Shown piece after piece: positions 3,433-19,721 of a stretch of 64,000 nucleotides of DNA. Source of the stretch: Parasitella parasitica NRRL 2501 (Eukaryota > Fungi > Mucoromycota); assembly GCA_025201805.1 (NCBI GenBank), contig MU619310.1, forward strand, positions 86,124 through 150,123. Direction: 5' to 3'. Every line of letters begins with the position of its first letter. Within the stretch, counting starts at the first letter, position 1. Both the position numbers and the translations under genes were made by a program. Under the pieces are notes generated by a model that worked only from the letters and a program-made list of their open reading frames with translations, was not told the origin of the DNA and did not search any database.

Positions 3433-4059
3433 TTAATTGATGATGAGAGCAAGGCAAGCAGCGATAGCAAACATCAAAGCACCAGTGTAAGTCAAAGAAT
3501 TAGCATTGCTAGGAGACTGAGTGGTAGTGGCAGCTGAGCCTGTAGTAGAGCCAGAGGATGAGGACGAGCCGTCAGCGTTGATACACATGCTGTTATTCCA
3601 GTTGGGAACAATGTCAGCAAGAACAACATCAATACATTGGTATAATTCACCATCGCCGCCATTATAAACAATCTGGATAGTAGCATTGGCGCCAGCTTTA
3701 GCAGCAGAGTTCTTTGTCAGGTCAAGAGACAAACAGGCGGCTTGAGGATAGGAACGAGTGCCCGTGGCGACTGCAACATTAGCAGAGTTGTTTGAGAAAT
3801 CGGCAACGGCAGGCTCGTTCTCAACCAACAAGTTGATCATGTAAGAGTAAGACGTGTGGCCAGAGTTAATTTCAACAAAACCGTCATTCAAAGGAAATTG
3901 CGATCGTGTGCCAACAGAGTCGAAGCCGCCACAGGGAGCAGTAGGCTCCTTTGTCTCGTCGAAACCTCGAGAATTTGGATAGGACACAGTGTAATGAGCC
4001 AACACGCTTTGAACAGAAATCAATGCGACGATAAATGCGATACAGAGACGTTGAGACAT
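3433..4059 (-). CDS. Secreted GPI-anchored copper-binding protein, Bim1/X325 (LPMO-like histidine brace) family, 208 aa
   Basis: 21-aa signal peptide followed directly by His22 (HYTVSYPNSRG). Also PCGG, a second His68, NATIQIVYNGGDGELYQCID, a Ser/Thr stalk and a hydrophobic C-terminal GPI signal. Confidence 0.85.
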   Translation of the reverse strand: MSQRLCIAFIVALISVQSVLAHYTVSYPNSRGFDETKEPTAPCGGFDSVGTRSQFPLNDGFVEINSGHTSYSYMINLLVENEPAVADFSNNSANVAVATGTRSYPQAACLSLDLTKNSAAKAGANATIQIVYNGGDGELYQCIDVVLADIVPNWNNSMCINADGSSSSSGSTTGSAATTTQSPSNANSLTYTGALMFAIAACLALIIN

Positions 4060-4922
4060 GTTGGTGCAATGTAGAAAATTTCAGAGGAAAAAAGAAGGTG
4101 CGAGTACAGAAAAATACCTGGCTATCAGAAAATAAATGGCGCTAACTGGAAAATGATTGGCCGTTTGTTAGCAAATATAACTCATTTTTGCTGTACTTTG
4201 GGCTATGATTGGACAATAATTTGATACGTCGTACTTATTGCGATGCTCTTTTACCATGCGACTTCATCTCAATCTGACATTACTATCTATACATTGGGAT
4301 TCTATAAAGCAAGCTAAATGCAGAAAGAAAAAACAGATGATTTTGATTACTTTTTGTAAACAATTTATAAATCGAAATGTCACTTACCCAATAGTCAACA
4401 TCAAATATGCAGCCCAGCTTCGTAGTATTGATTGTTGTTGATTGTGTGCATCATGAAAGCAAATTGGCTGTTCAAGTGCTGATTAGTCCGCAAGACTGAC
4501 TGATCTGACACTTTTTGTTCTTAATCATCGACAGCAATAAAGCGTCTTTTGCGACCATTAAACGTAAATGACATAGATGACAAGTTATTATTAACAAGAT
4601 TGAATGTGAAAAATAGTAGTTGATATGTACTTTGTTTAATAGAATAAATCGAAAATGTGGAGGTTTACACATGATTTCTAACTTCAGGGCTTTAATAATA
4701 AACGAGATTTCCGGTTTGAATCGAACTGTACTCGAGATAAGATATTAACAAGTCAGGACTTTTTTTTTTTTTTTTCAATGTTAGTTGGATATGCGCAAAA
4801 ATAGTCAATATTCAGCGCATGGTTAATAATTTATATTCAAGGCCGAATGTGGATAAATGTTTTGTTTCTTTACTCGTCAGATGCCAATAGCGACATAACC
4901 ACAAGAGACTTTAGATGACGAG

Positions 4923-6022
4923 CTAGTCACCCCGCCCACTCTGGCGATTTTTACACCTTTGCTACACTACGGTAAAAGTTGACCTTCGTTTACGCGGCGT
5001 CCATCTCGCTCTGCGAGGCTGTCAGTCTCCAAAATAAATGAAAATTTATTGGATTTGTACGGTATAAGAGGAAATAGCCGATAAAGGAAGATTTCAGTAA
5101 AAACGACATTTTTCGTGCATTCAAGTGGAATTCGTTTTTGCTTCTCATCCTCAGATTGCTCTATCAGAACTTTTATAAAAGCCAGGAGTTTGGACTCTCG
5201 AAAGAGCAACGAATAATGGGCCATGAGGGAATACAGGCTTTGGAAGGTATAAACCCTCTTTTTGCAAAGTTTGTCAGTGGGCCTTGTTTACAGACATTGA
5301 AAAGGTAAGCGTTATGGGAAACTGATGTCTTTGGAAGTTGCTGGGGGGGACTCATTAAGCGAATTTAAAGAAATTTTCGGAATAAGGACCACATCACCAA
5401 TTTCCGAACCCGAGATGATTCTTGCAGATATAACAGTTGAGAGAAGGGCCTCGATAATCAATCTTGTGCCATTACAAAGACCGGTAAATGGGCTAATGTT
5501 TCTTAGCAGGGTTAAAGTTTCAGTAGATGAGGAGGAAGACCACCAACATCAATGTTGTTCATCATTTCTAGGAGACACTGCACTTGAGCTACCTCAGAAG
5601 GACATTTATCAGCGCTACGATATATGACTTCTTGGCCAGGAATTTGAGCAAGTATGATATCATTTATGGACATCGGCATTCATTGGTGTCATTACAACTG
5701 AGTTAGTGAGTATGTCTACCCAGGGACGGGATATCATATCAGCACCGACTGTACCCAAAAGAGAGAGTGTGCATTTCTTAAGAGAATACACGTTGGTACC
5801 AGGAATCACCATATCGAATGACATGGGAATATAATCGGTATCAGCAGCAGGAGCAAAATCATTGCCGTTAAACCTGAATCCTGGAACTTTACCATTACCA
5901 ACATACAAAAGATAATTGGCAAAAGTCTGCAGTTGATTAGCAAGCTCATCTGTACTCGTTGGCCTGTTATATCTTTCTTTCTCTACCATCCGCATGAAAG
6001 ATTATAGCTTGAGATTGGGAAG
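4923..6022 (-). mobile_element. Helitron relic: C-terminal PIF1-like helicase pseudogene plus candidate 3' terminus
   Basis: Minus-strand frames give FANYLLYVGNG, VVMTPMNADV, GGLPPHLLKL, LLRNISPFTGLCNGTRLI, QRHQFPITLTFSMSVNKAH*QTL, GLYLPKPVFPHGPLFVALSRV and TKNVVFTEI, with frameshifts and stops. A GC hairpin (4933-4946) lies 6 nt before CTAG (4926-4923). Confidence 0.9.
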
Positions 6023-6024
6023 TC

Positions 6025-7520
6025 TCAGAATTCACGCATTGTTGGCTTGCTGCTCATCTGCTATCTCATGGGCAATTTGGGACATGTCCATACGGATGCA
6101 TTTACCATTCCGTGGACGACGTTCCCGAATCCCTACATCAATCCCGCTTGGAATTTGATCACTCGCGTCTTACACAAGATTATCCAGGAACAGCTTCCTA
6201 TGATGACTCTGGTGGTACCCTTCTGGTCCAGCGCTCTCTGGTTTTCCCCTGGTTCAACGGTTGGCTCTGACGGATCCTTGGTTATTACCTCCTCAATCGG
6301 TACAGACGACATCTCTCCGGACCCAGCACCCTCTAATTCGCAAAATTGGATGCTATCCGTGCAGAAATTATCCGGGCAAAGATTATAAGGTCTGGTCTTA
6401 ATGAAGACGCTTCTACGGCGTTGATTAGTCAACAATTGGCAAATACAGCAACTACCAAACAATACCGATTAAATTAAATCCGTTCTCTAGAATGGGCTCA
6501 AACTAATCGCGTCTCATTTATTCAATTTTCTGGTTCTGATCTGGTGAATTTCTTGGCTTTCATGCATCAAACTCGTAATCTCCAAGTGTCTACTCTCAAA
6601 ACTGTTCGTGTAGCTGTTACTCCTTTTAATGATCACTCACGATCCATCAGTGAAGATCCTTTGGTGAACTCATATTTTGACGCTTTAACTCATCAAGCTC
6701 CACCTATAGAAATATATAAAGACACGGTTGACATGTCCCCATATATGGAATTTGCTCGACTGATCCCATCACGACGCAGTACTTTTATATTACAGCTTCA
6801 ACAGAAATTGGCTTTCTTGCTATCCATGGCGGCCTTTATGCGTCCTTCGGATCTGGCGCAGATTACTTTCGCGTCTTGTCAAGTCGACTCTATACTGGCT
6901 GCCTTAAAATTAAGGTGGTTGCTCCCAAAGAGAAACGCTAGAAACGTACAATCATCAAGCCCTTCACCATACACCCACATAATATGGATATTGAACTCCT
7001 GTCTGGTTCATTTATTTAGGGTTTTAAGACACCATCCAGGTCTCATGTTACGTCCTCAAGATTCTTTACTGTTCGTCAAAGTCTAACAACATCCGGAAAC
7101 CTTTGGCTGCTGCAACAATTTCTTCTTGGTTGCATAAACATTTTATTTCTAAATCTATAGCAGAATCTCGGCTGTCGATTCGGTCGTTGGCTTCCTCCAG
7201 TGCAATGGAGAGTGGGATTCAATTGGACGATTTGGTTACTCTAGGAAACTGGGCATCTTCAGATGCTTTAGCAAATCACTACCAACGTAATCACATGACT
7301 ACCATCGATTTTACTTCTACGACACTTTCGGCTTCTACTACTGAGGGATTCTTTGATGCTGCTGCTTCCTTTGAATGATTCTCTTTAGATCTCTGGATCA
7401 GCACTATAATAACATTTCCTATTTTGTTCGGACTGTCTCGAACAACTCGCAAGAGAATTTTCTCAACCAAGAATTGCAAATTAGACCTGAGGAACAAAAT
7501 AGGAAATGTTAGAGCCCACC
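6025..7520 (+). mobile_element. DIRS-type tyrosine-recombinase retrotransposon, 5'-truncated and degenerate (MT-like domain, YR, ICR-like region)
   Basis: DAFTIPW...YINPAWNLITRVLHKI...LVVPFW is the DIRS methyltransferase-like domain. LAFLLSMAAFMRPSDL and SIRSLASS...LGNWASSDALANHYQR are YR catalytic motifs. There are multiple frameshifts and an inverted-repeat structure at 7410-7511. Confidence 0.88.
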
Positions 7521-7664
7521 CTTCTTTACTTATTTTCTATTTCTTTACTTCTCTTTTTTATTCCGAGCGAAAACATGATTAATAGTTCTAGATATAATTC
7601 TTTATTTCTTTATATAATTTCTAAATTCGCTATTAATAAAGTTCAAGAAGATGTTGGCACTATA

Positions 7665-8824
7665 CAGTCGACGAAAAAAGGTTGGCCCAATAAAAAAAAA
7701 TAATAGGCCAGTTTGAAATGAAAATGGATCACCGATTTTGAAAATGGGTCAACCAATGAAAATGGGTCATAATTTGAAAATGGGTCACTAAGACGAAAAT
7801 GGTTCATTGTTTTGAAAATGGGTCACCCAGTACGAAAATGGGTCACCAATACAGAAATGTAATGAGGATTGGCCGAATTCTCTCTTCTTTTTCTCTTCTT
7901 GAATTTTTTCATATTGCTCGACATGAACGAAGAATACAATTTTGACAGTGAGACAGTACCTGTGATGATATACAATCATATATGGACTGGGAAGAAACTG
8001 CAGCAGTAAATGCAGCACAAAAAGAAGCTAAGAGGAAGACCAAACCTCACTCCAAGGAGCCCTTCCTTGATGTAGTGAAGAAGGAAAGGGGATCATACAT
8101 TACCAAGAACGAAGTAAAGGTAGTCAATTTGATCAATTTGTTGCAAGAGTTTGAGAATATGTCTATCAGTGAAGCGGGTAGAAAGGTAGGGCTCTCCAAG
8201 TCAACAGCTATTCGTAAAGTCAAGCAGTGGGATCAAATGACAAGCGAAATAGCTGAAAAAGGGTTCCCTGATTCTATCGCAATCAAAGAAGGAAAGGGAC
8301 GACCCACAATACTCAAAGACGAACATACTGTATTTATCTTTGAGCTGCTGGCTAATGAGCCAACATTGACAGTTGAAGCTGTTACAGACCACCTGTCAAA
8401 AGAATTTAGAGATATACAGATCACCCTTAGATCAGTGGAAAATCATATGAAGAAGAAGAAGTGTCGCCTAACCTACAAGCGTATCATTCCTAGATATTAT
8501 GGCAGGAACACGGATGAAACTGTTACCAAAAGACGAGATGCGGTAGCATACTGGGTTAACCAGAACATAGACTTTATGAATGAATGTGTATTCTTGGATG
8601 AAGCTGGCTTTAACAGGAGTATGCATCGCTCATATGGATGGTCTGAGGCTGGAACACCTTGCAAAATTGATGTTCAAACGAAGGGAGCAAATGTCAGCAT
8701 CTTGGGTGCTATTTGTAAAAGTGGTTTAATCACATTATCCAGAAAACAAGTTGTACTTGGTGCTAGGAGTGGAAAACGAACTCGAACTGGTGAGAAATCT
8801 CAGGCCCCCAAGAGGAAAGGTACT
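7665..8824 (+). mobile_element. Tc1/IS630-family DNA transposon copy 1, intact 5' TIR, 3'-truncated
   Basis: TA|CAGTCGACG terminus at 7665. The ORF from 7982 is identical to the 14213-15430 transposase up to KRKGT (about 8824), then runs into unrelated sequence. Confidence 0.93.
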
Positions 8825-9516
8825 TTCTGCTGCCTCTTCAAATTTAATAAAAATTCCAACCACGGCTATACAGCCGAACAAAGCAGAAATGAGACGAGTT
8901 CATGTGATAATGATGATGATAAAATAATACAGAAAGAATTCTTGATACTTAAAATAAAGATACTGTTGTATCTATGGTCAATATATCGAATATCTAATAG
9001 AATGATACTCAATGCTTGCATATTACAGATAAGTAAGAGTTTGTTGACACAGACTTCAACTTGTAATACATAAGATCTACAATCACTCGTTGTACATAGT
9101 CAAAAACTAAGATGGGACGACTTTGCAGAACAAAAACAATCAAGAAGTTTATAAAGAGTAGTATTATTCATCAAATAAAGACCACCTAATTTTTATAAAG
9201 TCCTGTCGTCATTTACCGACTCTTTTATTTAATCTTAAGATAAAACAGATACACGATGGCAACCAACAGCGGATAATCGACACCACAAAATGCAAAGCGG
9301 TATTTCCTGGTAGCAATACAATATGACCAATATAGTATGATCTTGTCTTCCAAATCATCTAGGCCTAATCTCAATTATGTTATGAAACCTAGATTGAGTC
9401 GTTTATCTACAGATACCAAGAAAAAAAGTGAGAAACAAGAGTTACCCGTTAACTGAAAATGTTAATCGGAAATTTGTTACCAAAGCAATCATTTTTCAGT
9501 TCGCACCGTGCAACCT

Positions 9517-9790
9517 TACTAGCCTAAGCATCTTGGACACGTAAAAGAACCTGTTACTAAGTTTCCCGCCTTCCAACTCATACTAAAGGCCGTCCTGCAA
9601 AGTACAGTCGCAATGGCGTTCTGTTGGTGAGTAACCAATATACTAGCCCAAAGCATCTTTTACACGTAAAAGAACCTGTTACTAAGTTTCCCGCCTTCCA
9701 ACTCATACTAAAGGCCGTCCTGCAAAGTACAGTCGCAATGGCGTTCTGTTGGTGAGCAGCCAACATACTAGTCCAAAGCATCCTTTACGC
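9517..9790. repeat. Tandem repeat, about 125-bp unit, about 2.2 copies
   Basis: Units start at TACTAG at 9517, 9641 and 9766. The cores are near-identical (GTAAAAGAACCTGTTACTAAGTTTCCCGCC...). Confidence 0.92.
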
Positions 9791-10525
9791 TTGCCCAAGA
9801 TGATAAAAAGAAGTGATCCTGTGATTTTAACCAAGGCATTTGAAAAAGGAAGATGAAAGGCATTATTAGGAATATATAAAAGCATAATAAATAAGTAGTT
9901 ATCTTACATTAGTATTGTCTTCGCTAGCGCTAATCATATAAATAGCCTTATTCATATCGACTTTCAGTCCATGTGCTTATCAATAACCGATTCCATCTAC
10001 CATTTTCATCTACTAAAGATTCAAGATTAAATAGATCATGGTTTACGTATTTCCAGTTATAAACAACTTCATCCTCTCCGTTTGAAAGTATTTTTTGTTA
10101 AAATACATAGTGCATCAAACCTGGATTGAAACAACAGTTTTTTTTTATGACGACAGGTGTCCTGATCATACTAGTAGCTAATTATAAAATACGCGTTTAA
10201 TACAGAATAAAAAGCATCTAATACAACTATTACCTTTCACTTTTACAGAATGAGGAAACCCACTGTGGTCAAAAACTATTCTTGTATTTCTTCATCTTCG
10301 TTTGCAACATTCTTTTGCTTAAATAACCATGTGAAATGCTTATCAGCAGTTTAAAAAAATTAAAAAAAAAATTCAGTGTACGTCACAAATATATTTAAGG
10401 CTGCGATTGAGTTTGCGGAAGTACGGTATTAGTAATAACGCGCATCTTAGTTTTTTTCTGTTGTTGATGGGCTATGTCTTCCAAGAGAAAAACGACGAAC
10501 TATTGCTGCTGATGCACAGTGGTGC

Positions 10526-12325
10526 ATGGACAACAGAAATATTCTTACCTGCAAGGTTTTTGTGGATAAACACAAATTACTAGATTCTCAATATTCTGTC
10601 GCCAGATACAAATCCATTATTTCTAAATATTTACCTCAAGAAAAAGATCGACTGATTCAGGACTATGATCATTGGAAACGTAGCAGTGACTACAAATTGT
10701 ATTGGTTGGAAAAATCACGTACCTCTGTACAGCTGGACACTCGTGTGGAGTGTTCCTCCTTTGCAGGAGACGTGTTACGCCAGGAAACCGCAGCCATTAC
10801 CACAAGCATCAATGATGATTATGCAAACATTGACCCAAACAACAACATGGGCATGGCTGCCTCTTCCTCTTTCTCTTCTTCAACAGCCATTCAGGATAAC
10901 GAGAGCATTCTATCAAGTCCTATACCCACAACTTCCTTAGCAACAACCCCACTTGATACTATTGCCACCATCACCACAGAAGGACCTCCTATACCCACAA
11001 CTTCCTCAGCAACAACCCCACTTGATACTATTGCCACCATCACCACAGAAGGACCTCCTATACCCACAACTTCCTCAGCAACAGCCCCACTTGATACTAT
11101 TGCCACCATCACCACAGAAGGACCTCCTTGTCTTCCTTGGTTGATTGGTGACTTTGACGTGGCTGATGCATTTTACCGGTACAGATGTCATGTGATACAA
11201 CAAGCAAACGATAGGCTTCTTCAAATTGAAAAATCTGTGCACGAATTGTTGTCTCTGTCTCATATCCTCTTGCTATGCCCCAATCAACACAGTGATACTA
11301 TGCTGCATTTTTTCGATTTAGCCCAACTCCAGAAACTACATTATTCCCTCCTGACAGAATCATTGAATGATAGCATCACATTGCCAGATGACATTTACTT
11401 GAAATTGGTCTATGCCGTCACTGATGTTGATGCCAAGGTCAAGACAAGAGGTCAAGTAGAATTGCTTTTGCTTACTATGGCTCAAGACTTGGATATTCGC
11501 CAGCAATCAGTAGTTTGGGGGATTACAGCTGCGTAAGTTGTGTGATTGAGATTTATGACAACATAGGATTAGATACTAATGGTAGATATTACATTTCTCA
11601 CAAGTATAGTTTGAAGAAACTGCCATTCACTGCCATCAAAGATAAAACAACTATTGGAGAGGGAGAACTTCTGACTACATACTTTGATCCCATCCTTGCT
11701 AACATTTTGGCCAACCCAGATGAAAATGTACTTCTACGTTGGGCAAACGTCACTTGTGATGCAACCGGAGATAAGAGACCAGATGCAACCATCAGCAAGC
11801 TTACGCAAATGTCTTTTGGACCAAGCCTTGGATTTGGCGAGGCAAAAGTGGCTCAACCAACATGCGATAAATACATGCTTTGCCTCGACTTGACACGTTT
11901 GGCCACTTTTTCAAAAGATACGATTGACGAAAACAAGTTGAACGCATCTTTATCATTCCAAATACATGGTAAGCAAAGGAAAATGGAAGAAAGAATAAAT
12001 ATGTAAAGAACCGCTTCATTTTCTTGTAATAGGCTTTAGCGTTACTTTTTTTATCACCCGTTTACGACACGATGGCATCTATATCATGCAAGAAATAGCC
12101 CATATGACGTTTCCGCGATCGATTGAAGAATTAGCCACTTTCATCAGCATGAAAAATTTGAAGATGCTGCTCAAAGTCACTGATGTATTTTGGCGATTAT
12201 GTAAACCATGCGACAACGAAGAGCTGATTAAAGCAAATGGTCGTGCCACACATCCTTCGTTGCACTCATTGATTGATATATCCAAAGATCGACGTCGTTT
12301 ATGTTCATTACGATTTGGATCATAA
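10526..12325 (+). CDS. Uncharacterised protein of about 552 aa with a C-terminal PD-(D/E)XK nuclease-like domain. Exons 10526-11532, 11610-11968, 12033-12325.
   Basis: Two canonical introns (GTAAGT...TAG, GTAAGC...TAG) join three ORFs in frame with no stops. Motif E-LLTTYFDP...KRPDATI-x(10)-GFGEAK...DLTRLATFSK...FQIHGFSVTFF. Confidence 0.8.
10919..11128 (+). repeat. Three 69-bp in-frame coding repeats (PIPTTSSATTPLDTIATITTEGP)
   Basis: Units at 10919, 10988 and 11057 differ by 1-2 nt. Confidence 0.95.
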
Positions 12326-12549
12326 TATCTTTTGGCTTCTTTTCCTTCATTATCCTCTCTATGTACTATCTCTCCCTCCCCTCCTTTTCCCTAAACTATG
12401 CATTATACTTGATAATTTGGAAGAAATATTTACCATGTATTTGGAGTAGGCTAGGGTTATACAATGGCACAAAAGTTAAAGAAAAAGAACGTGCCAAGTG
12501 ACAAGTGCTTTTCGCACCGTCAAAAAATATTTTTGGGGTGCAACACACA

Positions 12550-14065
12550 CTACACTTATTTTGTCATACAATGTTTTTATTCAAGCAATCATTGACGGAG
12601 TATCTACAAAAATTTTGAAGGTCATTCAGAAGAATACTATTGCATACATCATGTATTCTTGAGGACAATGTCTCTTCTTACAACAACTGTTCTCGTTTCA
12701 TTTTGCTTTTGTAAACAGACCAAAGCTGCTCGATGGGATTCAGTTCAGGAGAATAAGGTGAAAGATACAAGCAGACATAACTGCGCTTCTTGATCTCTTT
12801 TTCAATATTACCATTTTTTTGTGGATAAGTACAATGTCAATCACAACATAGTGTCCCTTAAATTGCTCATATTTTTCAAAACATCCATCGTATTGCACAT
12901 AAAGTTGAAGTAATGTACTGCCTATCATAGTGCCACATCTACCTAGATTCTAGCAAGCAACCGTACAGATTCTTGACCTCCTCTTTTTACTCTGGACCAA
13001 AGCTCCCAATCTTATTTTCAGGATAATAATACCAATAATAGTACATATTTCTCGCTGACTTTGCTTGAAACTTTAATAAAACTATCTCCGCACAAGTATC
13101 AACCGTCAACCAAGTTATTATTTTTTTCATATTGACATAAAAAGCAGCCTCGTCAATAAATACACAGTTGCTTAAATATCCATATCGGTCTGTTGCCATC
13201 TGGTTTCCCGGCTGTGTCTTTTTTCCAGGTTTTCAGGTAAATTTGGTTTGATTGAGTGAAAGGGAGCTTTCTTCAAGCCGATTCTGCATTTTTCCCCCGT
13301 GAAATCATATAATGCAGTTTTTGACACTTCTAGTCCCATAAAATTACTCTTTAAATCATCTATTATTTGGTCTAAAACTAATGCTGGTTTCTTGTCAGCT
13401 CAACCAAAAGGTCTCTATGCTCTTCATGCAAATTTGATGAGTCTTTCGAAAAGAGTGTATTTTTCTTCACGTTTGGTAAGTTATGCTCTAGTATTCTTAC
13501 ATTATGGTTAGTTATATTTTAATTTAATTCACCTGGAGTCACCCTAGCTGGCCTTCATAGTCTGTATTTGTCCTCTGAGGCAACTTTCACTGGCTTTGAA
13601 GTAGTTGACTTTTTGTTTCCAGTTGGTTGTTTTTCCAATGGCTTATTCTTCATATAAGAAGAATGATTAACCAAAGTTTCAAGAACAATATTAGGATCGT
13701 CGATACTTGACATGACATCTTCCATAGGATCATACGTTAATTGACCGTTTTCATTATAAATATTGTTTTGTCCATCTTCATAAAAAAAAGAGTTCTTCAT
13801 CTCGAAAGGCTACAATAGACATTATAAGAAAAAGATAATCAAAAGCCTCCTCAGAAAAACTAAGAAGGTCGTTTTATTCCTGTGGCAGCGAAAACTTATT
13901 TCTGATTGGGCGACATTTTGTTCCTGTAAGAGCGAAATTTAATTCCTGATTGGCCGATATTTTACTTCTAATTAAGCGACATTTTATTTCTGATTAGGTG
14001 ACATTTTATTTCTGATTGGGTGACATTTTGTTCGGCCCGGACAACATAATTTATTGGATCAACTG
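12550..14065 (-). mobile_element. Old degenerate Tc1/IS630-like transposon of a second family
   Basis: Fragments FFYEDGQNNIYNENG, NCVFIDEAAF, and LSPYSPELNPIEQLWS. The 5' TIR begins CAGTTGATCC at 14065 (minus strand) and contains about 22-bp subrepeats (AAAATGTCACCCAATCAGAAAT). Many stops and frameshifts. The left boundary is approximate. Confidence 0.85.
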
Positions 14066-14067
14066 TA

Positions 14068-15696
14068 CAGTCGACGAAAAAAGGTTGGCCCAATAAAAAA
14101 AAATAATTGGCCAGTTTGAAATAAAAATGGATCACCGATTTTGAAAATGGGTCAGCCAATGAAAAATGGGTCACCAATAAAGAAGTGTAATGTATGCTTT
14201 TTATTTTGTTTCTTATAATCCTTTTTCACAATTCAAACATCTCTGCCAGAACGTCAAAGAATGCTTTATCCAATTCTCGCAATCTTCTCTGTTGATGTGA
14301 AGTGCTGCGTTGCGAATACGATCAGAGATTTTTTCATTCTGCCTGACAGAAGAAGGATCGTTATTTACAACAGTCTTTAGCTTGGACCAAAACTCTTCGA
14401 TCGGATTTAAAAAAGGAGAATAAGGTGGCAAAAAGAGAAGTTTATAACCACGTTGCCCAACCCAATCTTCAATAAGTGCAGCCTTGTGAATGGATGCATT
14501 GTCAAGAACTAGATATTTGTAGCTCATGTTAGCCGCATCCAGTGTCGTAAGGACCTGCTCTATGTATTCAAGGAAGTCACTGCTGGTAGTACCTTTCCTC
14601 TTGGGGGCCTGAGATTTCTCACCAGTTCGAGTTCGTTTTCCACTCCTAGCACCAAGTACAACTTGTTTTCTGGATAATGTGATTAAACCACTTTTACAAA
14701 TAGCACCCAAGATGCTGACATTTGCTCCCTTCGTTTGAACATCAATTTTGCAAGGTGTTCCAGCCTCAGACCATCCATATGAGCGATGCATACTCCTGTT
14801 AAAGCCAGCTTCATCCAAGAATACACATTCATTCATAAAGTCTATGTTCTGGTTAACCCAGTATGCTACCGCATCTCGTCTTTTGGTAACAGTTTCATCC
14901 GTGTTCCTGCCATAATATCTAGGAATGATACGCTTGTAGGTTAGGCGACACTTCTTCTTCTTCATATGATTTTCCACTGATCTAAGGGTGATCTGTATAT
15001 CTCTAAATTCTTTTGACAGGTGGTCTGTAACAGCTTCAACTGTCAATGTTGGCTCATTAGCCAGCAGCTCAAAGATAAATACAGTATGTTCGTCTTTGAG
15101 TATTGTGGGTCGTCCCTTTCCTTCTTTGATTGCGATAGAATCAGGGAACCCTTTTTCAGCTATTTCGCTTGTCATTTGATCCCACTGCTTGACTTTACGA
15201 ATAGCTGTTGACTTGGAGAGCCCTACCTTTCTACCCGCTTCACTGATAGACATATTCTCAAACTCTTGCAACAAATTGATCAAATTGACTACCTTTACTT
15301 CGTTCTTGGTAATGTATGATCCCCTTTCCTTCTTCACTACATCAAGGAAGGGCTCCTTGGAGTGAGGTTTGGTCTTCCTCTTAGCTTCTTTTTGTGCTGC
15401 ATTTACTGCTGCAGTTTCTTCCCAGTCCATATATGATTGTATATCATCACAGGTACTGTCTCACTGTCAAAATTGTATTCTTCGTTCATGTCGAGCAATA
15501 TGAAAAAATTCAAGAAGAGAAAAAGAAGAGAGAATTCGGCCAATCCTCATTACATTTCTGTATTGGTGACCCATTTTCGTACTGGGTGACCCATTTTCAA
15601 AACAATGAACCATTTTCGTCTTAGTGACCCATTTTCAAATTATGACCCATTTTCATTGGTTGACCCATTTTCAAAATCGGTGATCCATTTTCATTT
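14068..15696 (-). mobile_element. Tc1/IS630-family DNA transposon copy 2: intact 3' TIR, outer 5' TIR lost
   Basis: TA|CAGTCGACG at 14068. The 5' TIR matches copy 1 up to ...TGATCCATTTTCATTT (15696) and is then replaced by other sequence. Confidence 0.95.
14213..15430 (-). CDS. Intact DD34E transposase, 405 aa
   Basis: HTH (SISEAGRKVGLSKSTA), GRP, FLDEAGF, VLDNASIH and LPPYSPFLNPIEEFW. There are 34 residues between the second D and the E. Confidence 0.95.
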   Translation of the reverse strand: MDWEETAAVNAAQKEAKRKTKPHSKEPFLDVVKKERGSYITKNEVKVVNLINLLQEFENMSISEAGRKVGLSKSTAIRKVKQWDQMTSEIAEKGFPDSIAIKEGKGRPTILKDEHTVFIFELLANEPTLTVEAVTDHLSKEFRDIQITLRSVENHMKKKKCRLTYKRIIPRYYGRNTDETVTKRRDAVAYWVNQNIDFMNECVFLDEAGFNRSMHRSYGWSEAGTPCKIDVQTKGANVSILGAICKSGLITLSRKQVVLGARSGKRTRTGEKSQAPKRKGTTSSDFLEYIEQVLTTLDAANMSYKYLVLDNASIHKAALIEDWVGQRGYKLLFLPPYSPFLNPIEEFWSKLKTVVNNDPSSVRQNEKISDRIRNAALHINREDCENWIKHSLTFWQRCLNCEKGL

Positions 15697-15748
15697 GTTC
15701 CTCAGGTCTAATTTGCAATAGGAGGGAGTGAATTAAGTGGGAGATTTT
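15694..15748 (+). mobile_element. Isolated DIRS terminal (ITR-start) fragment
   Basis: TTTGTTCCTCAGGTCTAATTTGCAA (15694-15718) is the exact reverse complement of 7474-7498, just downstream of the DIRS YR. It begins with TTT, as DIRS1-like ends do. Confidence 0.65.
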
Positions 15749-16405
15749 TGATCTTTGACGTGGTGTCTCTCTACTATTAAAGGGCGATAACGTCTTGATA
15801 TTATCGATTACAAGTCTTCTTTCAAATTCTACTGCATCGCAAATATATGGAAAACAGTCAATTACTCTTTTCTCGATTGTATCATTATCACTATGAAAAC
15901 AGGCGTAATTAGCATTTAACAAAGCTTTAATCTTTAAACAAAAAAAATATTTTATGAATTGCTGAATGTTAACCGGGCCAGTAGAGAGACCAGCATAGTC
16001 TATAACGACTAAGCAAACTTTTTGTTGTGACGAGGAGATAAAATCGATCATTCCTAAAGTAGCATTGACTTGGCACTATCAGGCAACAATATTTGCGTCG
16101 ATGTTTTTATCGATATCTACTAAAGTAAAAAGTTGATTTATCGAAATTAATGCTTTTAAACTTAATGGAAATATACTTATATTATATATACCTTGATGTT
16201 GCTATGAACATTTCTTATCTTTTTCTAGTGTTTCGATTTCATCTTTAAAGTCTCTTGTGGTGATTTCGCTATTGGCATCTGACGAGTAAAGAAACAAAAC
16301 ATTTATCCACATTCGACCTTGAAATAAATTATTAATCTTGCGCTGAATATTCTTGGCCCGATATTGTGCTGATTTGACTGACTTTTGCACATATCCAACC
16401 AACTG
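15748..16405 (-). pseudogene. Decayed intron-containing serine-recombinase/resolvase-like gene
   Basis: VGYVQKS (compare the resolvase GYARxS nucleophile motif), SSDANSEITTRD, VCLVVIDYAGLST and FNSRETPRQRS. It has a frameshift and two intron relics (about 16191-16054, and about 15950-15891 with branch point TGCTAAT and a mutated donor). Confidence 0.55.
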
Positions 16406-16439
16406 CTAAGTCTATAAATGAATGCTATATTAGATTACC

Positions 16440-17305
16440 AATCTCTTCAGATGATAACTTGGCAGACCATCGTTATGATTTGAAGCCAATGGAAGGGTTC
16501 AGCAACGTATTTCCCGGCACTGATACCCGAGCCGGTAGAAGCACAAACCACTTCAACGCGTATAAGAGAATGCATGGTCTGCTGTATTATGATGAATCAT
16601 TAGATGCACCTGACTTTGATCTTTTGTCCTTCAATGAGCTCCAAGCTTTGGTTTTTGGTGTTATCAAAACATTTGCTTTCCTCGGAAACGCCCAAGAATC
16701 TCGCATCTTCTTTGTTGATGGTCGAGGTGTTGCTGGTAAGACATTTGTGTTTAATTTAGGCCTTGATCGTGTCAGAAGAGAAGGCCATATTGCGATTATT
16801 GCTATGGCATCGAGTCAAACTGCTGCATTGTTGCTCAAAGGCGGACGCACTGCTCACTCTACCTTTAAGATACCGTTAGAGATTACCAATACCAACATGT
16901 GCGACATTTCGCCCTGCTCTGGCATAGCATCATTTATCCAAAGAGCAAAAATTGTTGTTTGGGATGAATGCTCAATGATCAACAAGGACTTGATAGCAAC
17001 AGTTGATCGCTTATTTCGTGAGTGCTTGAACAAAGCCAGCTTTTGGCCAGTGGTAGTCTCAATGCAATTGCGTACAAACATGAGAGTTTGACAGGCCCTT
17101 CAGACTGACAATCCAGGTCTTGCTAATGAACTTCAACAATTTTCTGATTATCGACTTCAGATTGGTCAAGGCACTGTTCCTACAATTACTCTGCCCCAGA
17201 GACATATCTTCAGATTTTATCCAAATTCCTGAAGAGGTGCTCATATCTGGAGATGATTTGATTAATTTGATGAAAAGCATTTTTGATATTGCCACTGCGG
17301 ACTAG
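16440..17305 (+). mobile_element. Helitron PIF1-like helicase relic (N-terminal motifs, internally deleted)
   Basis: FFVDGRGVAGKTF (Walker A), ASSQTAALLLKGGRTAHSTFKIP, VVWDECSM (Walker B) and LRTNMRV, with stops and frameshifts. Confidence 0.88.
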
Positions 17306-17978
17306 CATTCAACGCTCAAAGTACTGTATTTGCGACAACAGGCCTAGATTAGGACAGCTGCTGCGAGCTTTGAAGACTAGAGATTCACATAATCGACTCG
17401 GGACTAAGAAGGGCACTAGTAGGCTTTTGTCGGATCTGCTATGTTGAGCCATGCTAAGGTCAGTTGCATCCTGTCTACACAATCCGAGAAAAGGAAAATG
17501 TAGCAGAGTGTCGCGGGATTCTTCCAAACAATAAGTACATTGCATAGTCACGAGAAACGTACCATTGTCTACCCTGTTTTTATCAGGCTTGAATCTGTCT
17601 ACCGCGTATTTTTTTTTGCTCTGACCTTTGGTATACCAAATCCACATCTTGCTTCTAACCAATTGACTTTCGTTTTTTTTTTTTTGAATGCGAAATCCGG
17701 TATCTTGTTTGCAAATTATATCCAGAGTTTCTTGCTTTTTGGGTCCTTGATTGTAATGAGCATGTTGTTTCCGTAAACCTGAATGCTGCAAAGCATATTG
17801 CATTGTACAGAAAAAAGCAGGCATTTTACAGGAATGGTGTAACAAACAAGGTTCGAGGGATTTTAGCTTTCCCTAGTCGACTGATTGGGAGTTGCAGTTT
17901 TAGAGCAGTCCATTTAAGGGCATTCAATGTTTCCTCTTCCTTTCCGCCTTCTTTTTGAAAAACAAAAAACAGGCCAGG

Positions 17979-19721
17979 ATGGACATGGATATGGATATGA
18001 GCTCGCAGGGAACGCCTCCCAACATCAACGAGCCCTATGCTAAAAAGCTGATTACCATCATAGCCTCCATCGTAGCCTTCCTTACTGTACGACATTTATT
18101 TATTTACATTCACAACAAGACCAAAACAACATTTGGATTTCGATGGATGCACCAAATGTCATCCTCTTATGCAAGCATAGAGAATTTTGTGGTAAACAAA
18201 CTTTCATATACGGCGCTGTATGGGGCATCCCCGCCTTTGGGGGCTCTATTGCTGTTGCTGGCCCTGGTTTCTGCTGTATTACCTTTGCTTTTATTAAACG
18301 TTGACTTGGCTGTCAATTCGAATCGTGCCGGCTTTTTATGCCTTGCCATGGTGCCCTTCCTCCTCTCGTCCACCGGAAAAAATTCAGCTATATCTCTGCT
18401 GACAGGAATATCCAGTGTTAAGCTTAACTTTCTGCATCGCATATTGGGCATGGCACTGTTTATATGCGCCACTGTACACATGTCGACAATGCTTCATTCG
18501 TGGTCAAGATTCCCAACGTTCCTAAAATCCGAGCTGCAGCTGTCCAAAGTGCAGTATGGTCTGGCTGGCTACGGATGTTTATGCGTAGTGATCCTGGGCA
18601 GCATCTTGCCGGTGCGCATCTTTTGCTACGAAGCATTTGTAGTCACTCATGTGCTGGGCATTGCTTTCATCGGCTGTATTGCCGTCCATACGCCTTACGC
18701 TATGCGCTATTTCTTCTCAGGCCTGGTCTGCTACATGCTCAACTTGCTAGCTGTATGGTTTGTCAAGACCTATGTTGCCCAGGCTCGGTTTGAAGTATTA
18801 CCTGAAGGATGCACAAAGGTCTCGATCCGGCTCGCAAGCCCCATCAAGACGCATTATATTGGACAACACATTAATTTATGCATCCCAGCCATCTCACCCT
18901 TTCAATGGCACCCGTTCACCATCACAAGCGTGCAGCAGCAAAATGCCGCTTATCAAAACTCTATAGAAGTATGCGTTTGCTCTCGCGGCAACTTCACAAG
19001 AGCTTTGTACAATAAGGCTCTCCCCAATCAAGATGTGCGTGTGTTTGTCAGCGGTCCATTTGGCAGCAATAGCATCAGGGCAACTCGAGTGCTTGATAGC
19101 CACTCTTCTGTTGTCATTGCATGTGGCGGCTCTGGCATTACATTCGGCATGCGCTTGCTGCGTGAATTGACGGACACCTTGATATCGCACGATGAAGAAG
19201 CCAGTAAATCTTCTTTACTCAATCACTACAAGACCAAGGACATTTACTTTTATTGGTGCGTGCGACGCGCATTAGAGATTGAATGGTTCAGAGAAGAGCT
19301 GGAGCAGATCAATTATCTTTATGACGCACATGGGCAATTCCCCAATCTCCACATTCGATTCCATATCACTGCTAATGGTACGGATAACACGACTGAAGAA
19401 ACCACTGTGGATGAAGAGCCTGGCATCAATGAAACGGCCGACTCTGGCGATACTGCGAATCTGTATACGACCGAACATGGCTCAAGAAAAGACATCGATG
19501 TGGTCTATGGACGTCGCTTGGATGCTAAAGCTGTCCTCGAAACTGTAGACGGAGATATGGGCGCTTTTGGTAAGTCTTGGAATAGATGTACTTTGCACTA
19601 TGCTAATCGCCTATTTATTGATATAGTGTGCGGCCCTGCAGGATTCAATGCTGCGTTCAAAAACGTAGTAGCCTTGCACAAATCAAATGCTTATCTTCAT
19701 TGCGAAAGTTTTGGATATTAA
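17979..19721 (+). CDS. Ferric/cupric reductase (FRE/NOX superfamily) with N-terminal MDMDMDM; intron 19570-19626
   Basis: Heme His pairs (FLHRILG...VH; TH...VH), HPFT (FAD), GPFG, GGSGITF (NADPH), VCGP after splicing and terminal HCESFGY. Confidence 0.92.
   Translation: MDMDMDMSSQGTPPNINEPYAKKLITIIASIVAFLTVRHLFIYIHNKTKTTFGFRWMHQMSSSYASIENFVVNKLSYTALYGASPPLGALLLLLALVSAVLPLLLLNVDLAVNSNRAGFLCLAMVPFLLSSTGKNSAISLLTGISSVKLNFLHRILGMALFICATVHMSTMLHSWSRFPTFLKSELQLSKVQYGLAGYGCLCVVILGSILPVRIFCYEAFVVTHVLGIAFIGCIAVHTPYAMRYFFSGLVCYMLNLLAVWFVKTYVAQARFEVLPEGCTKVSIRLASPIKTHYIGQHINLCIPAISPFQWHPFTITSVQQQNAAYQNSIEVCVCSRGNFTRALYNKALPNQDVRVFVSGPFGSNSIRATRVLDSHSSVVIACGGSGITFGMRLLRELTDTLISHDEEASKSSLLNHYKTKDIYFYWCVRRALEIEWFREELEQINYLYDAHGQFPNLHIRFHITANGTDNTTEETTVDEEPGINETADSGDTANLYTTEHGSRKDIDVVYGRRLDAKAVLETVDGDMGAFGKSWNRCTLHYANRLFIDIVCGPAGFNAAFKNVVALHKSNAYLHCESFGY

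What the first reader, a model, noticed from the sequence alone, without database searches (positions are those of the whole stretch)
3433..19721. Candidate head-to-head copper-acquisition gene pair (His-brace Bim1-like protein + Met-motif metalloreductase) pried apart by a 12.4-kb transposon island
Seen: the only recognisable host genes flanking the island are the Bim1/X325-like gene (minus strand, ATG 4059) and a FRE-type reductase starting MDMDMDM (plus strand, ATG 17979). They are divergent. Removing 4923-17305 would leave about 1.5 kb between the ATGs. TTTGCT cores occur at 4170, 4187 and 4458, and TTTGCTC at 17615. Established: Cryptococcus Bim1 is a copper-starvation-induced surface Cu binder that works with Ctr1; FRE enzymes reduce Cu(II) for Ctr uptake; MxM motifs bind Cu(I); Mac1 binds TTTGC(T/G)C(A/G). 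Inference: this is an ancestral bidirectional, copper-regulated capture-and-reduce module, which I do not know to be described in Mucorales. The hexamers are common in AT-rich DNA, so they are weak support.
Basis: partly seen in the sequence, partly recalled or inferred. Interest (0 to 1): 0.8.

Follow-up and report, generated by a model that had tools for sequence, protein, structure and literature searches.

The report
Split Bim1–reductase copper gene pair
A copper-binding surface protein gene and a metal-reductase gene that sit head-to-head about 220-350 bp apart in most related moulds sampled have been separated here by a 13.7-kb transposon pile, which cuts the copper-binder gene off from a promoter element that it shares with copper-transporter genes.

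Summary
Both genes are real. There is one BIM1/X325-like gene (3433-4059, minus) and one FRE-type reductase (17979-19721, plus, with a 57-bp intron), and they are divergent.

The orthologs are adjacent and head-to-head in Parasitella, Mucor lusitanicus, M. hiemalis, Cokeromyces, Backusella and Radiomyces. The start codons are 217-353 bp apart (959 bp in M. hiemalis), and the outer neighbours differ at depth.

The details need correcting:
- The insert is 4115-17804 (13,690 bp), flanked by an 11-bp duplication. It is not 4923-17305.
- The restored spacer is 218 bp, not 1.5 kb.
- All four cited TTTGCT sites lie inside the insert, at chance frequency.
- No canonical Mac1 site occurs in any of the seven shared promoters.

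The conserved promoter is CCAATCA, 16 bp, AGCNAAAAYCNCKC ("box 3"), then a TATA box. It lies upstream of BIM1-like genes in 12 Mucorales. Box 3 also lies upstream of the two Ctr genes I could examine.

Here all of this module stays with FRE. BIM1 keeps 44 bp of native upstream DNA, yet still shows purifying selection.

Copper co-regulation is inferred, not shown. Verdict: a new variant of the known divergent copper-uptake gene pairs.

The parts
3433..4059 (-). BIM1/X325-like gene. One exon, 208 aa: signal peptide, mature N-terminal His, Ser/Thr linker and a hydrophobic GPI-type tail.
   Evidence: PF20238 E 3.8e-30. Aligns from His22 to His1 of LaX325 6IBH, E 8e-22, with the second brace His kept. 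86% identical to Parasitella P0002. It is the only copy in the genome. dN/dS is 0.09.
4060..4103 (-). The 44 bp of native upstream DNA left attached to the BIM1-like gene.
   Evidence: Aligns to Parasitella L001 about 9973-10000.
4104..4114 (.). Left copy of the 11-bp direct repeat GTACAGAAAAA, a putative target-site duplication.
   Evidence: Sequence read. Parasitella has a single copy of the matching stretch.
4115..17804 (.). Inserted block of 13,690 bp made of nested transposon DNA. It holds a high-copy repeat at 4412-4767; inverted arms at 4807-4913 and 16246-16351; a truncated Tc1 at 7982-9073 and an intact Tc1 transposase at 14213-15430, within 99% identical inverted arms at 7716-8839 and 14573-15696; and a PIF1 helicase fragment at 16459-17091.
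   Evidence: Absent from the Parasitella, M. lusitanicus, Cokeromyces, Backusella and Radiomyces spacers. Pfam hits, repeats, own-genome copies. The type of the founding element is unresolved.
17805..17815 (.). Right copy of the 11-bp direct repeat GTACAGAAAAA.
17822..17831 (-). Degenerate TATA-like box that faced BIM1. It reads TGTAAAATG here and TATAAA in relatives.
   Evidence: Position matches the TATAAA boxes of the other species. Its function is inferred.
17852..17870 (-). Box 3, the candidate copper-responsive element. It reads AAAGCTAAAATCCCTCGAA toward BIM1. The core is AGCNAAAAYCNCKC.
   Evidence: Core columns are invariant in 12 Mucorales BIM1 promoters (alignment A2). A matrix built from the pair species ranks the BIM1-upstream site 1st, 1st, 1st, 1st and 2nd of about 41,000 positions in five independent loci. 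It also lies upstream of two Ctr genes.
17882..17888 (-). CCAATCA box, 16 bp from the AGC core of box 3 (13 bp from the 19-mer listed above).
   Evidence: Invariant CCAAT in all 12 promoters.
17904..17911 (-). Box 1, GGACTGCT, found only in the species that have the FRE-BIM1 pair.
   Evidence: Present in the window, Parasitella, M. lusitanicus, M. hiemalis and Radiomyces, and as GGACTTCT in Backusella. Absent in Cokeromyces and in the species without the pair.
17979..19569 (+). FRE-type metalloreductase, exon 1. N-terminal MDMDMDM, 7 hydrophobic segments, and bis-heme His pairs H153/H167 and H224/H237. HPFT and GGSG motifs are present.
   Evidence: PF01794, PF08022 and PF08030. Motifs and hydropathy. 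85% identical to Parasitella P0084. Own paralogs are far more distant. dN/dS is 0.07.
19570..19626 (+). Probable 57-bp in-frame intron (GTAAGT...ATAG).
   Evidence: Removing it restores the family's GAFVCGPAGF end motif. The Parasitella gene call is 565 aa from 1755 bp.
19627..19721 (+). FRE exon 2 and stop codon.

Best explanation
This is a conserved head-to-head gene pair of core Mucorales, most likely a copper capture-and-reduce module. In this genome a transposon insertion has split it.

Shown:
- The BIM1-like gene and its specific FRE partner are divergent neighbours with a 217-353 bp spacer in five of six other genomes (959 bp in M. hiemalis).
- The spacer holds a conserved module: CCAATCA, then 16 bp, then AGCNAAAAYCNCKC (box 3), then a TATA box facing BIM1.
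- The same module precedes BIM1-like genes in Mucorales that lack the pair.
- Box 3 also precedes two Ctr transporter genes.
- Here a 13,690-bp block with an 11-bp duplication sits 44 bp upstream of the BIM1 ATG, between the TATA-like box and the gene. The whole module therefore remains with FRE.

Inferred:
- The GPI-anchored His-brace protein binds Cu(II) at the cell surface.
- The 7-TM flavocytochrome reduces it to Cu(I). Its outward-facing Met/His-rich N-terminus passes Cu(I) on to Ctr.
- A copper-sensing factor acting at box 3 co-induces BIM1, FRE and Ctr when copper is scarce. The genome has six copper-fist loci.
- In this strain FRE keeps that control, while BIM1 must use transposon-borne or cryptic promoter DNA.

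The confidence given (0.6) is for the whole statement including the inferred copper function. The ancestral pairing alone is about 0.95.
For: - Synteny: FRE(-)/BIM1(+) are adjacent in Parasitella (217 bp), M. lusitanicus (276), M. hiemalis (959), Cokeromyces (291), Backusella (353) and Radiomyces (339). In Backusella and Radiomyces every other neighbour differs.
- Orthology: the partner FREs are 46-86% identical over their full length. The three in-genome paralogs give no tblastn hit at 1e-5.
- More cases, inferred: both genes lie on the same short contigs or carry adjacent locus tags in M. bainieri, Pilobolus, Mycotypha, Benjaminiella and Cunninghamella echinulata, and on unnamed contigs of 5-35 kb.
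- Breakpoints and duplication.
- Promoter footprint.
- Box 3 in Ctr promoters: the own-genome Ctr on contig C52 and the Phycomyces Ctr share 17 of 19 bases.
- Box 3 is absent from the FTR1/FET3 iron-uptake promoter.
- Other copper links: a Gongronella model fuses this FRE type to a Ctr domain, and Phycomyces has Ctr-BIM1-COX17 in a row.
- The N-terminal MDMDMDM, MDMMGHDM or MDHNHG motif is conserved across the FRE orthogroup.
- Both genes have dN/dS of 0.07-0.09.
- Precedent: in Fusarium oxysporum, Mac1 binds the shared promoters of the divergent pairs ctr3/fre9 and fre12/ctr1b (bioRxiv 10.1101/2024.04.23.590778).
Against: - I found no expression, binding or transport data for any Mucorales member.
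- No canonical Mac1 site is present in any of the seven shared promoters.
- The strict box 3 pattern is not enriched genome-wide: 15 hits against 9 for the reversed control.
- Only one of the three own-genome Ctr genes carries box 3.
- The fixed CCAAT spacing also fits a CBC/HapX-type (iron) arrangement.
- The pair is missing in Lichtheimia, Phycomyces and Syncephalastrum.
- Databases name the reductase ferric-chelate reductase or Frp1.
- The N-terminus being outside the cell rests on a hydropathy count in which one of the seven segments is weak.
- The base-level breakpoint rests on a single close relative, Parasitella.
Confidence: 0.6

Rival explanations
1. The reductase is an iron (reductive iron assimilation) enzyme. 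The shared promoter is then controlled by iron through the CCAAT-binding complex and a HapX-like partner. BIM1 is linked to it because copper is needed for the Fet3 ferroxidase.
For: Sources annotate the protein as ferric-chelate reductase or Frp1. An invariant CCAAT box sits at a fixed distance from box 3, which resembles the bipartite CBC:HapX sites known from Aspergillus (my own knowledge). Two of the three Lichtheimia FRE genes are induced by iron limitation (PMC8065604), though I could not map them to this orthogroup.
Against: Box 3 is absent from the own-genome FTR1/FET3 promoter. It is present in two Ctr promoters without the fixed-spacing CCAAT. This FRE type is fused to Ctr in Gongronella. 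The N-terminus is Met/His-rich, like Ctr ectodomains.
Confidence: 0.2
2. The adjacency is a passive relic. A very short spacer offers few places where a rearrangement can break it without harming a promoter, so the pair persists without any functional coupling. On this view box 3 serves BIM1 alone.
For: The CCAAT, box 3 and TATA module faces BIM1 and exists in species without the FRE neighbour. The pair has been lost or was never formed in several families.
Against: All other neighbours have turned over in Backusella and Radiomyces while the pair stayed. The same FRE type and BIM1 are each independently linked to Ctr or COX17 elsewhere. Chance adjacency in this genome is about 0.003.
Confidence: 0.1
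3. The reductase is the electron donor for the His-brace protein itself. It reduces BIM1-bound Cu(II) to switch on an oxidative, LPMO-like cell-wall activity rather than to feed copper uptake.
For: BIM1/X325 proteins share the LPMO fold and His brace (PMC7924993). LPMOs need an external reductant (established knowledge). Cryptococcus Cbi1/Bim1 loss alters the cell wall (PMC9258870).
Against: I recall that no polysaccharide-cleaving activity was found for X325 proteins, but I could not read that paper here. Box 3 is shared with Ctr promoters. The FRE-Ctr fusion points to transport.
Confidence: 0.08

Closest known systems
Divergently transcribed copper-uptake pairs ctr3/fre9 and fre12/ctr1b of Fusarium oxysporum, driven by shared Mac1-bound promoters (bioRxiv 10.1101/2024.04.23.590778)
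   Same: A plasma-membrane FRE metalloreductase sits head-to-head with another copper-acquisition gene across a short shared promoter.
   Different: The partner here is a BIM1/X325-like surface copper binder, not a Ctr transporter. The lineage is Mucoromycota. No TGCTCA or TTTGCKCR Mac1 site is present in the shared module, and the conserved element is different (box 3). Regulation is untested.
Cryptococcus neoformans Bim1/Cbi1 working with Ctr1 (Garcia-Santamarina et al. 2020, cited in PMC9258870)
   Same: Same protein family (PF20238), with a signal peptide, N-terminal His brace and GPI-type tail. It is a surface copper binder induced by copper limitation that works with Ctr1.
   Different: The papers I could read describe no reductase partner and no FRE adjacency. 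The 2020 paper itself was not held, so I cannot exclude that it mentions gene neighbourhoods.
LaX325 of Laccaria bicolor (PDB 6IBH)
   Same: The 141-residue domain aligns at E 8e-22, from the mature His1 through the second His and the GGDG...YQC block.
   Different: Basidiomycete protein. Identity over the domain is modest.
Saccharomyces cerevisiae Fre1/Fre7, the Mac1-regulated cupric/ferric reductases
   Same: Same three-domain flavocytochrome architecture with bis-heme His pairs.
   Different: No close orthology: the nearest non-Mucoromycota hits are 24-30% identical. The N-terminal Met/His cluster and the BIM1 linkage are features of this orthogroup.

Membership tests
BIM1-like / X325 His-brace copper proteins (PF20238) | Match to the family profile above the curated cut-off | tested here: met
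   105.6 bits against a cut-off of 27, covering profile positions 2-139 of 140.
BIM1-like / X325 His-brace copper proteins (PF20238) | Histidine as the first residue after signal-peptide cleavage, plus a second brace histidine | tested here: met
   Query ...VLA|HYTV aligns His22 to His1 of 6IBH, and the SGH of the query aligns to His49 of the chain. The cleavage site itself is inferred.
BIM1-like / X325 His-brace copper proteins (PF20238) | Third (Asp) copper ligand | tested here: inconclusive
   Both candidate Asp residues (in GGDG and in IDV) are conserved in the alignment. I could not confirm from a held source which one is the ligand.
BIM1-like / X325 His-brace copper proteins (PF20238) | GPI-anchor signal at the C-terminus | tested here: inconclusive
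   A Ser/Thr-rich linker and a hydrophobic tail are visible in the translation. No GPI predictor was available.
BIM1-like / X325 His-brace copper proteins (PF20238) | Binds Cu(II) and supports Ctr-dependent uptake | not testable with these tools
   Needs biochemistry and genetics.
FRE/NOX ferric-reductase-domain flavocytochromes | Ferric_reduct TM domain plus FAD- and NAD-binding domains | tested here: met
   PF01794 E 1.8e-19, PF08022 E 1.8e-12, PF08030 E 2.8e-12.
FRE/NOX ferric-reductase-domain flavocytochromes | Two His pairs in two TM helices for bis-heme binding, plus HPFT, GxGxG-type and CGP motifs | tested here: met
   H153/H167 and H224/H237; HPFT at 311, GGSG at 383 and CGP at 551 of the unspliced ORF.
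FRE/NOX ferric-reductase-domain flavocytochromes | Substrate preference (cupric versus ferric) | not testable with these tools
   Only context points to copper.
Mac1-type copper-regulated divergent uptake gene pair | Two copper-acquisition genes transcribed divergently from one short spacer | tested here: met
   Met in six relatives. Disrupted in this window by the insert.
Mac1-type copper-regulated divergent uptake gene pair | Mac1 consensus sites (TTTGC(T/G)C(A/G), or TGCTCA in Fusarium) in the shared promoter | tested here: not met
   There is no TTTGCKCR match in any of the seven spacers. The Fusarium core TGCTCA occurs once, in the extra DNA of M. hiemalis.
Mac1-type copper-regulated divergent uptake gene pair | A copper-fist transcription factor is encoded in the genome | tested here: met
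   Six PF00649 loci above the cut-off.
Mac1-type copper-regulated divergent uptake gene pair | Co-induction under copper limitation | not testable with these tools
   No Mucorales copper transcriptome was found.

The most novel reading that the evidence does not exclude
Box 3 (AGCNAAAAYCNCKC; its reverse complement is a T-run followed by GCT) is the copper-responsive element of Mucorales. A copper-fist factor reads it, and it defines a small regulon of BIM1, its partner FRE and one Ctr. The FRE hands Cu(I) from BIM1-bound copper to Ctr through its external Met/His cluster. On this reading the strain is a natural promoter-disconnection mutant of BIM1.
Probability: 0.35. Interest if true: 0.7.

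Novelty: new variant of a known kind. Interest (0 to 1): 0.55.

Why it matters
Copper uptake is a virulence trait in Cryptococcus, Aspergillus, Candida and Fusarium, but I found almost nothing on it for Mucorales, the agents of mucormycosis.

A conserved BIM1-FRE pair with a very short shared promoter gives three concrete things to test: a candidate cupric reductase partner for Bim1-type proteins, a candidate cis-element shared with Ctr promoters, and a tractable species that carries the pair (M. lusitanicus).

The split locus in this genome also shows where a transposon can land. It sits between the TATA-like box and the coding sequence, yet the gene has not visibly decayed.

Tried and rejected
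They lie inside the insert and occur at chance frequency.
- A genome-wide scan with the strict box 3 pattern gave 15 hits against 9 for the control. It has no power, and I did not inspect the other 14 hits.
- Box 3 in the other two Ctr loci and the other three FRE loci: no convincing upstream site.
- Type of the founding transposon: no terminal inverted repeats, poly-A or other signature at the outer ends. The arms at 4807-4913 and 16246-16351 have no matching flanking duplication.
- Literature: no paper describing BIM1-FRE linkage or Mucorales copper regulons was found. Garcia-Santamarina 2020 could not be read.
- Mapping the Lichtheimia FRE ortholog to the iron-regulated LcFRE5 genes failed, because the identifiers differ.
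Cunninghamella, Pilobolus, Rhizopus and non-Mucoromycota BIM1 loci were therefore not inspected directly.
- Searches used the unspliced FRE ORF by reference. The joined two-exon model was translated in one script, only to check the reading frame, and was not sent to any search tool.
I rebuilt the same matrix from coordinates in the loci instead.

Full report
**What is in the window**

ORF 3433-4059 (minus strand) encodes a 208-aa protein that matches the BIM1-like copper acquisition domain PF20238 (E 3.8e-30). It aligns from His22, which follows a signal-peptide-like VLA, to His1 of the solved X325 protein 6IBH. The second brace histidine and the GGDG...YQC block are kept (E 8e-22). It ends in a Ser/Thr-rich linker and a hydrophobic tail.

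ORF 17979-19721 (plus strand) starts MDMDMDM and carries Ferric_reduct, FAD_binding_8 and NAD_binding_6. It has His pairs H153/H167 and H224/H237, the HPFT, GGSG and CGP motifs, and seven hydrophobic segments. A 57-bp in-frame intron at 19570-19626 is likely, because removing it restores the family's GAFVCGP end motif. All searches used the unspliced ORF by reference. The joined model was only translated inside one script to check the frame and was not sent to any search tool.

The genome (32.8 Mb) has one BIM1-like gene, four FRE loci and three Ctr loci. An FRE within 14 kb of BIM1 has a chance probability of about 0.003.

**Is the pair ancestral?**

Yes. Twelve gene-context look-ups were run on BIM1 orthologs. 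The divergent FRE(-)/BIM1(+) arrangement is present in six other genomes:

| Species | Distance between start codons |
|---|---|
| Parasitella parasitica | 217 bp |
| Mucor lusitanicus (two assemblies) | 276 bp |
| M. hiemalis | 959 bp |
| Cokeromyces recurvatus | 291 bp |
| Backusella circina | 353 bp |
| Radiomyces spectabilis | 339 bp |

In the Mucor-Parasitella-Cokeromyces group a Sec24 gene also stays next to BIM1. In Backusella and Radiomyces every other neighbour is different, so only the pair has survived.

The partner reductases are true orthologs. They are 46-86% identical to the window's FRE over the full length, whereas the genome's own three paralogs give no tblastn hit at 1e-5.

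The cases are M. bainieri (tags 000422/000423), Pilobolus umbonatus, M. velutinosus, Mycotypha, Benjaminiella, Cunninghamella echinulata (both genes on one 31,980-bp contig) and several unnamed contigs of 5-35 kb. I could not inspect these directly.

The pair is absent in Lichtheimia ramosa, Phycomyces nitens, Syncephalastrum racemosum and the Mortierellomycotina species Lobosporangium. It is also absent from a second BIM1 lineage that lies next to a P4-ATPase in Gilbertella and M. mucedo. A protein tree separates an FRE-linked clade from that second clade, with Backusella and Radiomyces outside both.

**Where the insertion really is**

The window is collinear with Parasitella over 26 kb, except between the two genes.

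The whole 217-bp Parasitella spacer is accounted for by window 17978-17805 on the FRE side and 4103-4060 on the BIM1 side. The 11-mer GTACAGAAAAA occurs at both junctions (4104-4114 and 17805-17815), while Parasitella has one copy of the corresponding stretch. I read this as a target-site duplication.

The inserted block is therefore 4115-17804 (13,690 bp), and the restored spacer is 218 bp.

The block contains:
- an intact 405-aa Tc1/DDE_3 transposase gene (14213-15430);
- a truncated copy (7982-9073), with both copies lying within 99% identical inverted arms;
- a PIF1 helicase fragment (16459-17091);
- other debris.

The type of the founding element is unresolved.

**The promoter**

TTTGCT occurs 21 times in these 14 kb. 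The Mac1 consensus TTTGCKCR is at or below chance in the window, 9 against 12.1 expected. It is absent from all seven shared spacers.

The spacers do share a clear footprint, in this order:
1. GGACTGCT (box 1, found only in species with the pair).
2. CCAATCA.
3. Sixteen bases further on, AGC(T/G/A)AAAA(Y)C(N)C(K)C (box 3).
4. A TATA box facing BIM1.

A matrix built only from the seven pair species was scanned over five independent 20-kb loci from Mucorales without the pair. The site just upstream of BIM1 ranked 1st, 1st, 1st, 1st and 2nd of about 41,000 positions. In a 12-species alignment the CCAAT and box 3 cores are invariant (A2). Lobosporangium has no such site.

Box 3 also lies about 110 bp upstream of the ATG of the own-genome Ctr gene on contig C52, and about 135-155 bp upstream of the Phycomyces Ctr gene. 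The two sites share 17 of 19 bases and have the orientation that FRE sees. Box 3 is absent from the own FTR1/FET3 iron-uptake promoter and from the other FRE paralogs.

Read on the other strand, box 3 is a T-run followed by GCT. I recall this as the general shape of copper-fist sites, and the genome has six copper-fist loci. This identification is an inference. The strict pattern is not enriched genome-wide. The fixed CCAAT spacing could also fit a CBC/HapX-type site.

**Consequence in this genome**

The insertion lies 44 bp upstream of the BIM1 ATG, on the gene side of the TATA-like box (17822-17831). As a result box 1, the CCAAT box, box 3 and the TATA box all remain 68-157 bp upstream of FRE. 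BIM1 is 13.7 kb away from them.

Even so, BIM1 is intact. Its dN/dS against Parasitella is 0.09, and its distance to M. lusitanicus is no greater than that of Parasitella. Either the insertion is recent or the gene is still expressed some other way.

**Other evidence for a copper role**

- The N-terminal MDMDMDM, MDMMGHDM or MDHNHG cluster, followed by TPPNINEPYA and the first TM helix, is conserved across the FRE orthogroup. With seven TM segments it would face outward, like Ctr Mets motifs, but this rests on hydropathy alone.
- A Gongronella butleri gene model joins this FRE type to a C-terminal Ctr domain.
- Phycomyces nitens has Ctr, BIM1 and COX17 in a row.

**Comparison with what is known**

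- Bim1/Cbi1 of Cryptococcus is a surface copper binder induced by copper starvation that works with Ctr1 (PMC9258870).
- In Fusarium oxysporum, Mac1 binds the shared promoters of the divergent pairs ctr3/fre9 and fre12/ctr1b, and co-expressing ctr3 and fre9 rescues a mac1 mutant (bioRxiv 10.1101/2024.04.23.590778).
- I found no paper on a BIM1-FRE pair or on copper regulons in Mucorales. The original Bim1 paper was not held.

I therefore class this as a new variant of a known kind. The head-to-head logic is known. What is new is the BIM1 partner, the Mucorales element and the transposon split.

**Verdict**

- The ancestral pairing is established (confidence about 0.95).
- The corrected insertion limits are well supported but rest on one close relative.
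- The copper capture-and-reduce reading, with shared regulation, is the best explanation at about 0.6.
- An iron-reductase reading is about 0.2, passive linkage about 0.1, and a redox-partner reading under 0.1.

Noticed in passing
L005:8521-11145 (Phycomyces nitens JAJDOM010000008.1): Three copper genes lie in a row: Ctr(+), BIM1-like(+) and COX17(-). Box 3 is upstream of both Ctr and BIM1.
   Followed up: partly
P0148 (Gongronella butleri KAI8060925.1): A 747-aa gene model joins an FRE of this orthogroup (residues 105-565) to a C-terminal Ctr domain (596-728). It is either a real fusion or two merged neighbouring genes.
   Followed up: partly
L007:9290-10000 (Mucor hiemalis): The spacer is 959 bp. 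Box 3 and the TATA box stay near FRE, and about 700 extra bp lie between the TATA box and the BIM1 ATG. This is the same spot as the insertion in the window, so it may be an independent hit at a favoured site.
   Followed up: no
window 7716-8839 and 14573-15696: Two Tc1/mariner copies in inverted orientation are 99% identical over 1,124 bp. One has an intact 405-aa DDE_3 transposase ORF (14213-15430) and the other is truncated, which suggests recent activity.
   Followed up: partly
window 10526-12006: ORFs without a Pfam match sit between the Tc1 arms. One has three 69-bp in-frame tandem repeats at 10918-11128. Other first-stage notes call this a nuclease gene, which I did not test.
   Followed up: no
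window 9523-9772 and 13872-14055: A 125-bp tandem duplication (94% identical) and an array of six 22-bp units lie inside the island.
   Followed up: no
P0153, P0156, P0164 (ascomycete Frp1-like reductases and an unnamed contig): Distant FRE relatives (24-25% identity) also begin with MxM repeats such as MSMSMDMDMS or MDMSGMSGMDMS. A Met-rich N-terminus may mark an old FRE subfamily.
   Followed up: no
L008:9840-9900 (Cokeromyces recurvatus): The FRE-BIM1 spacer holds a poly(A) tract of about 60 bp directly after box 3 and lacks box 1.
   Followed up: no
G000 contigs C24, C71, C10, C44, C26, C139: Six loci carry a copper-fist DNA-binding domain (PF00649). That is a large set, and these are candidates for the factor that reads box 3.
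   Followed up: no
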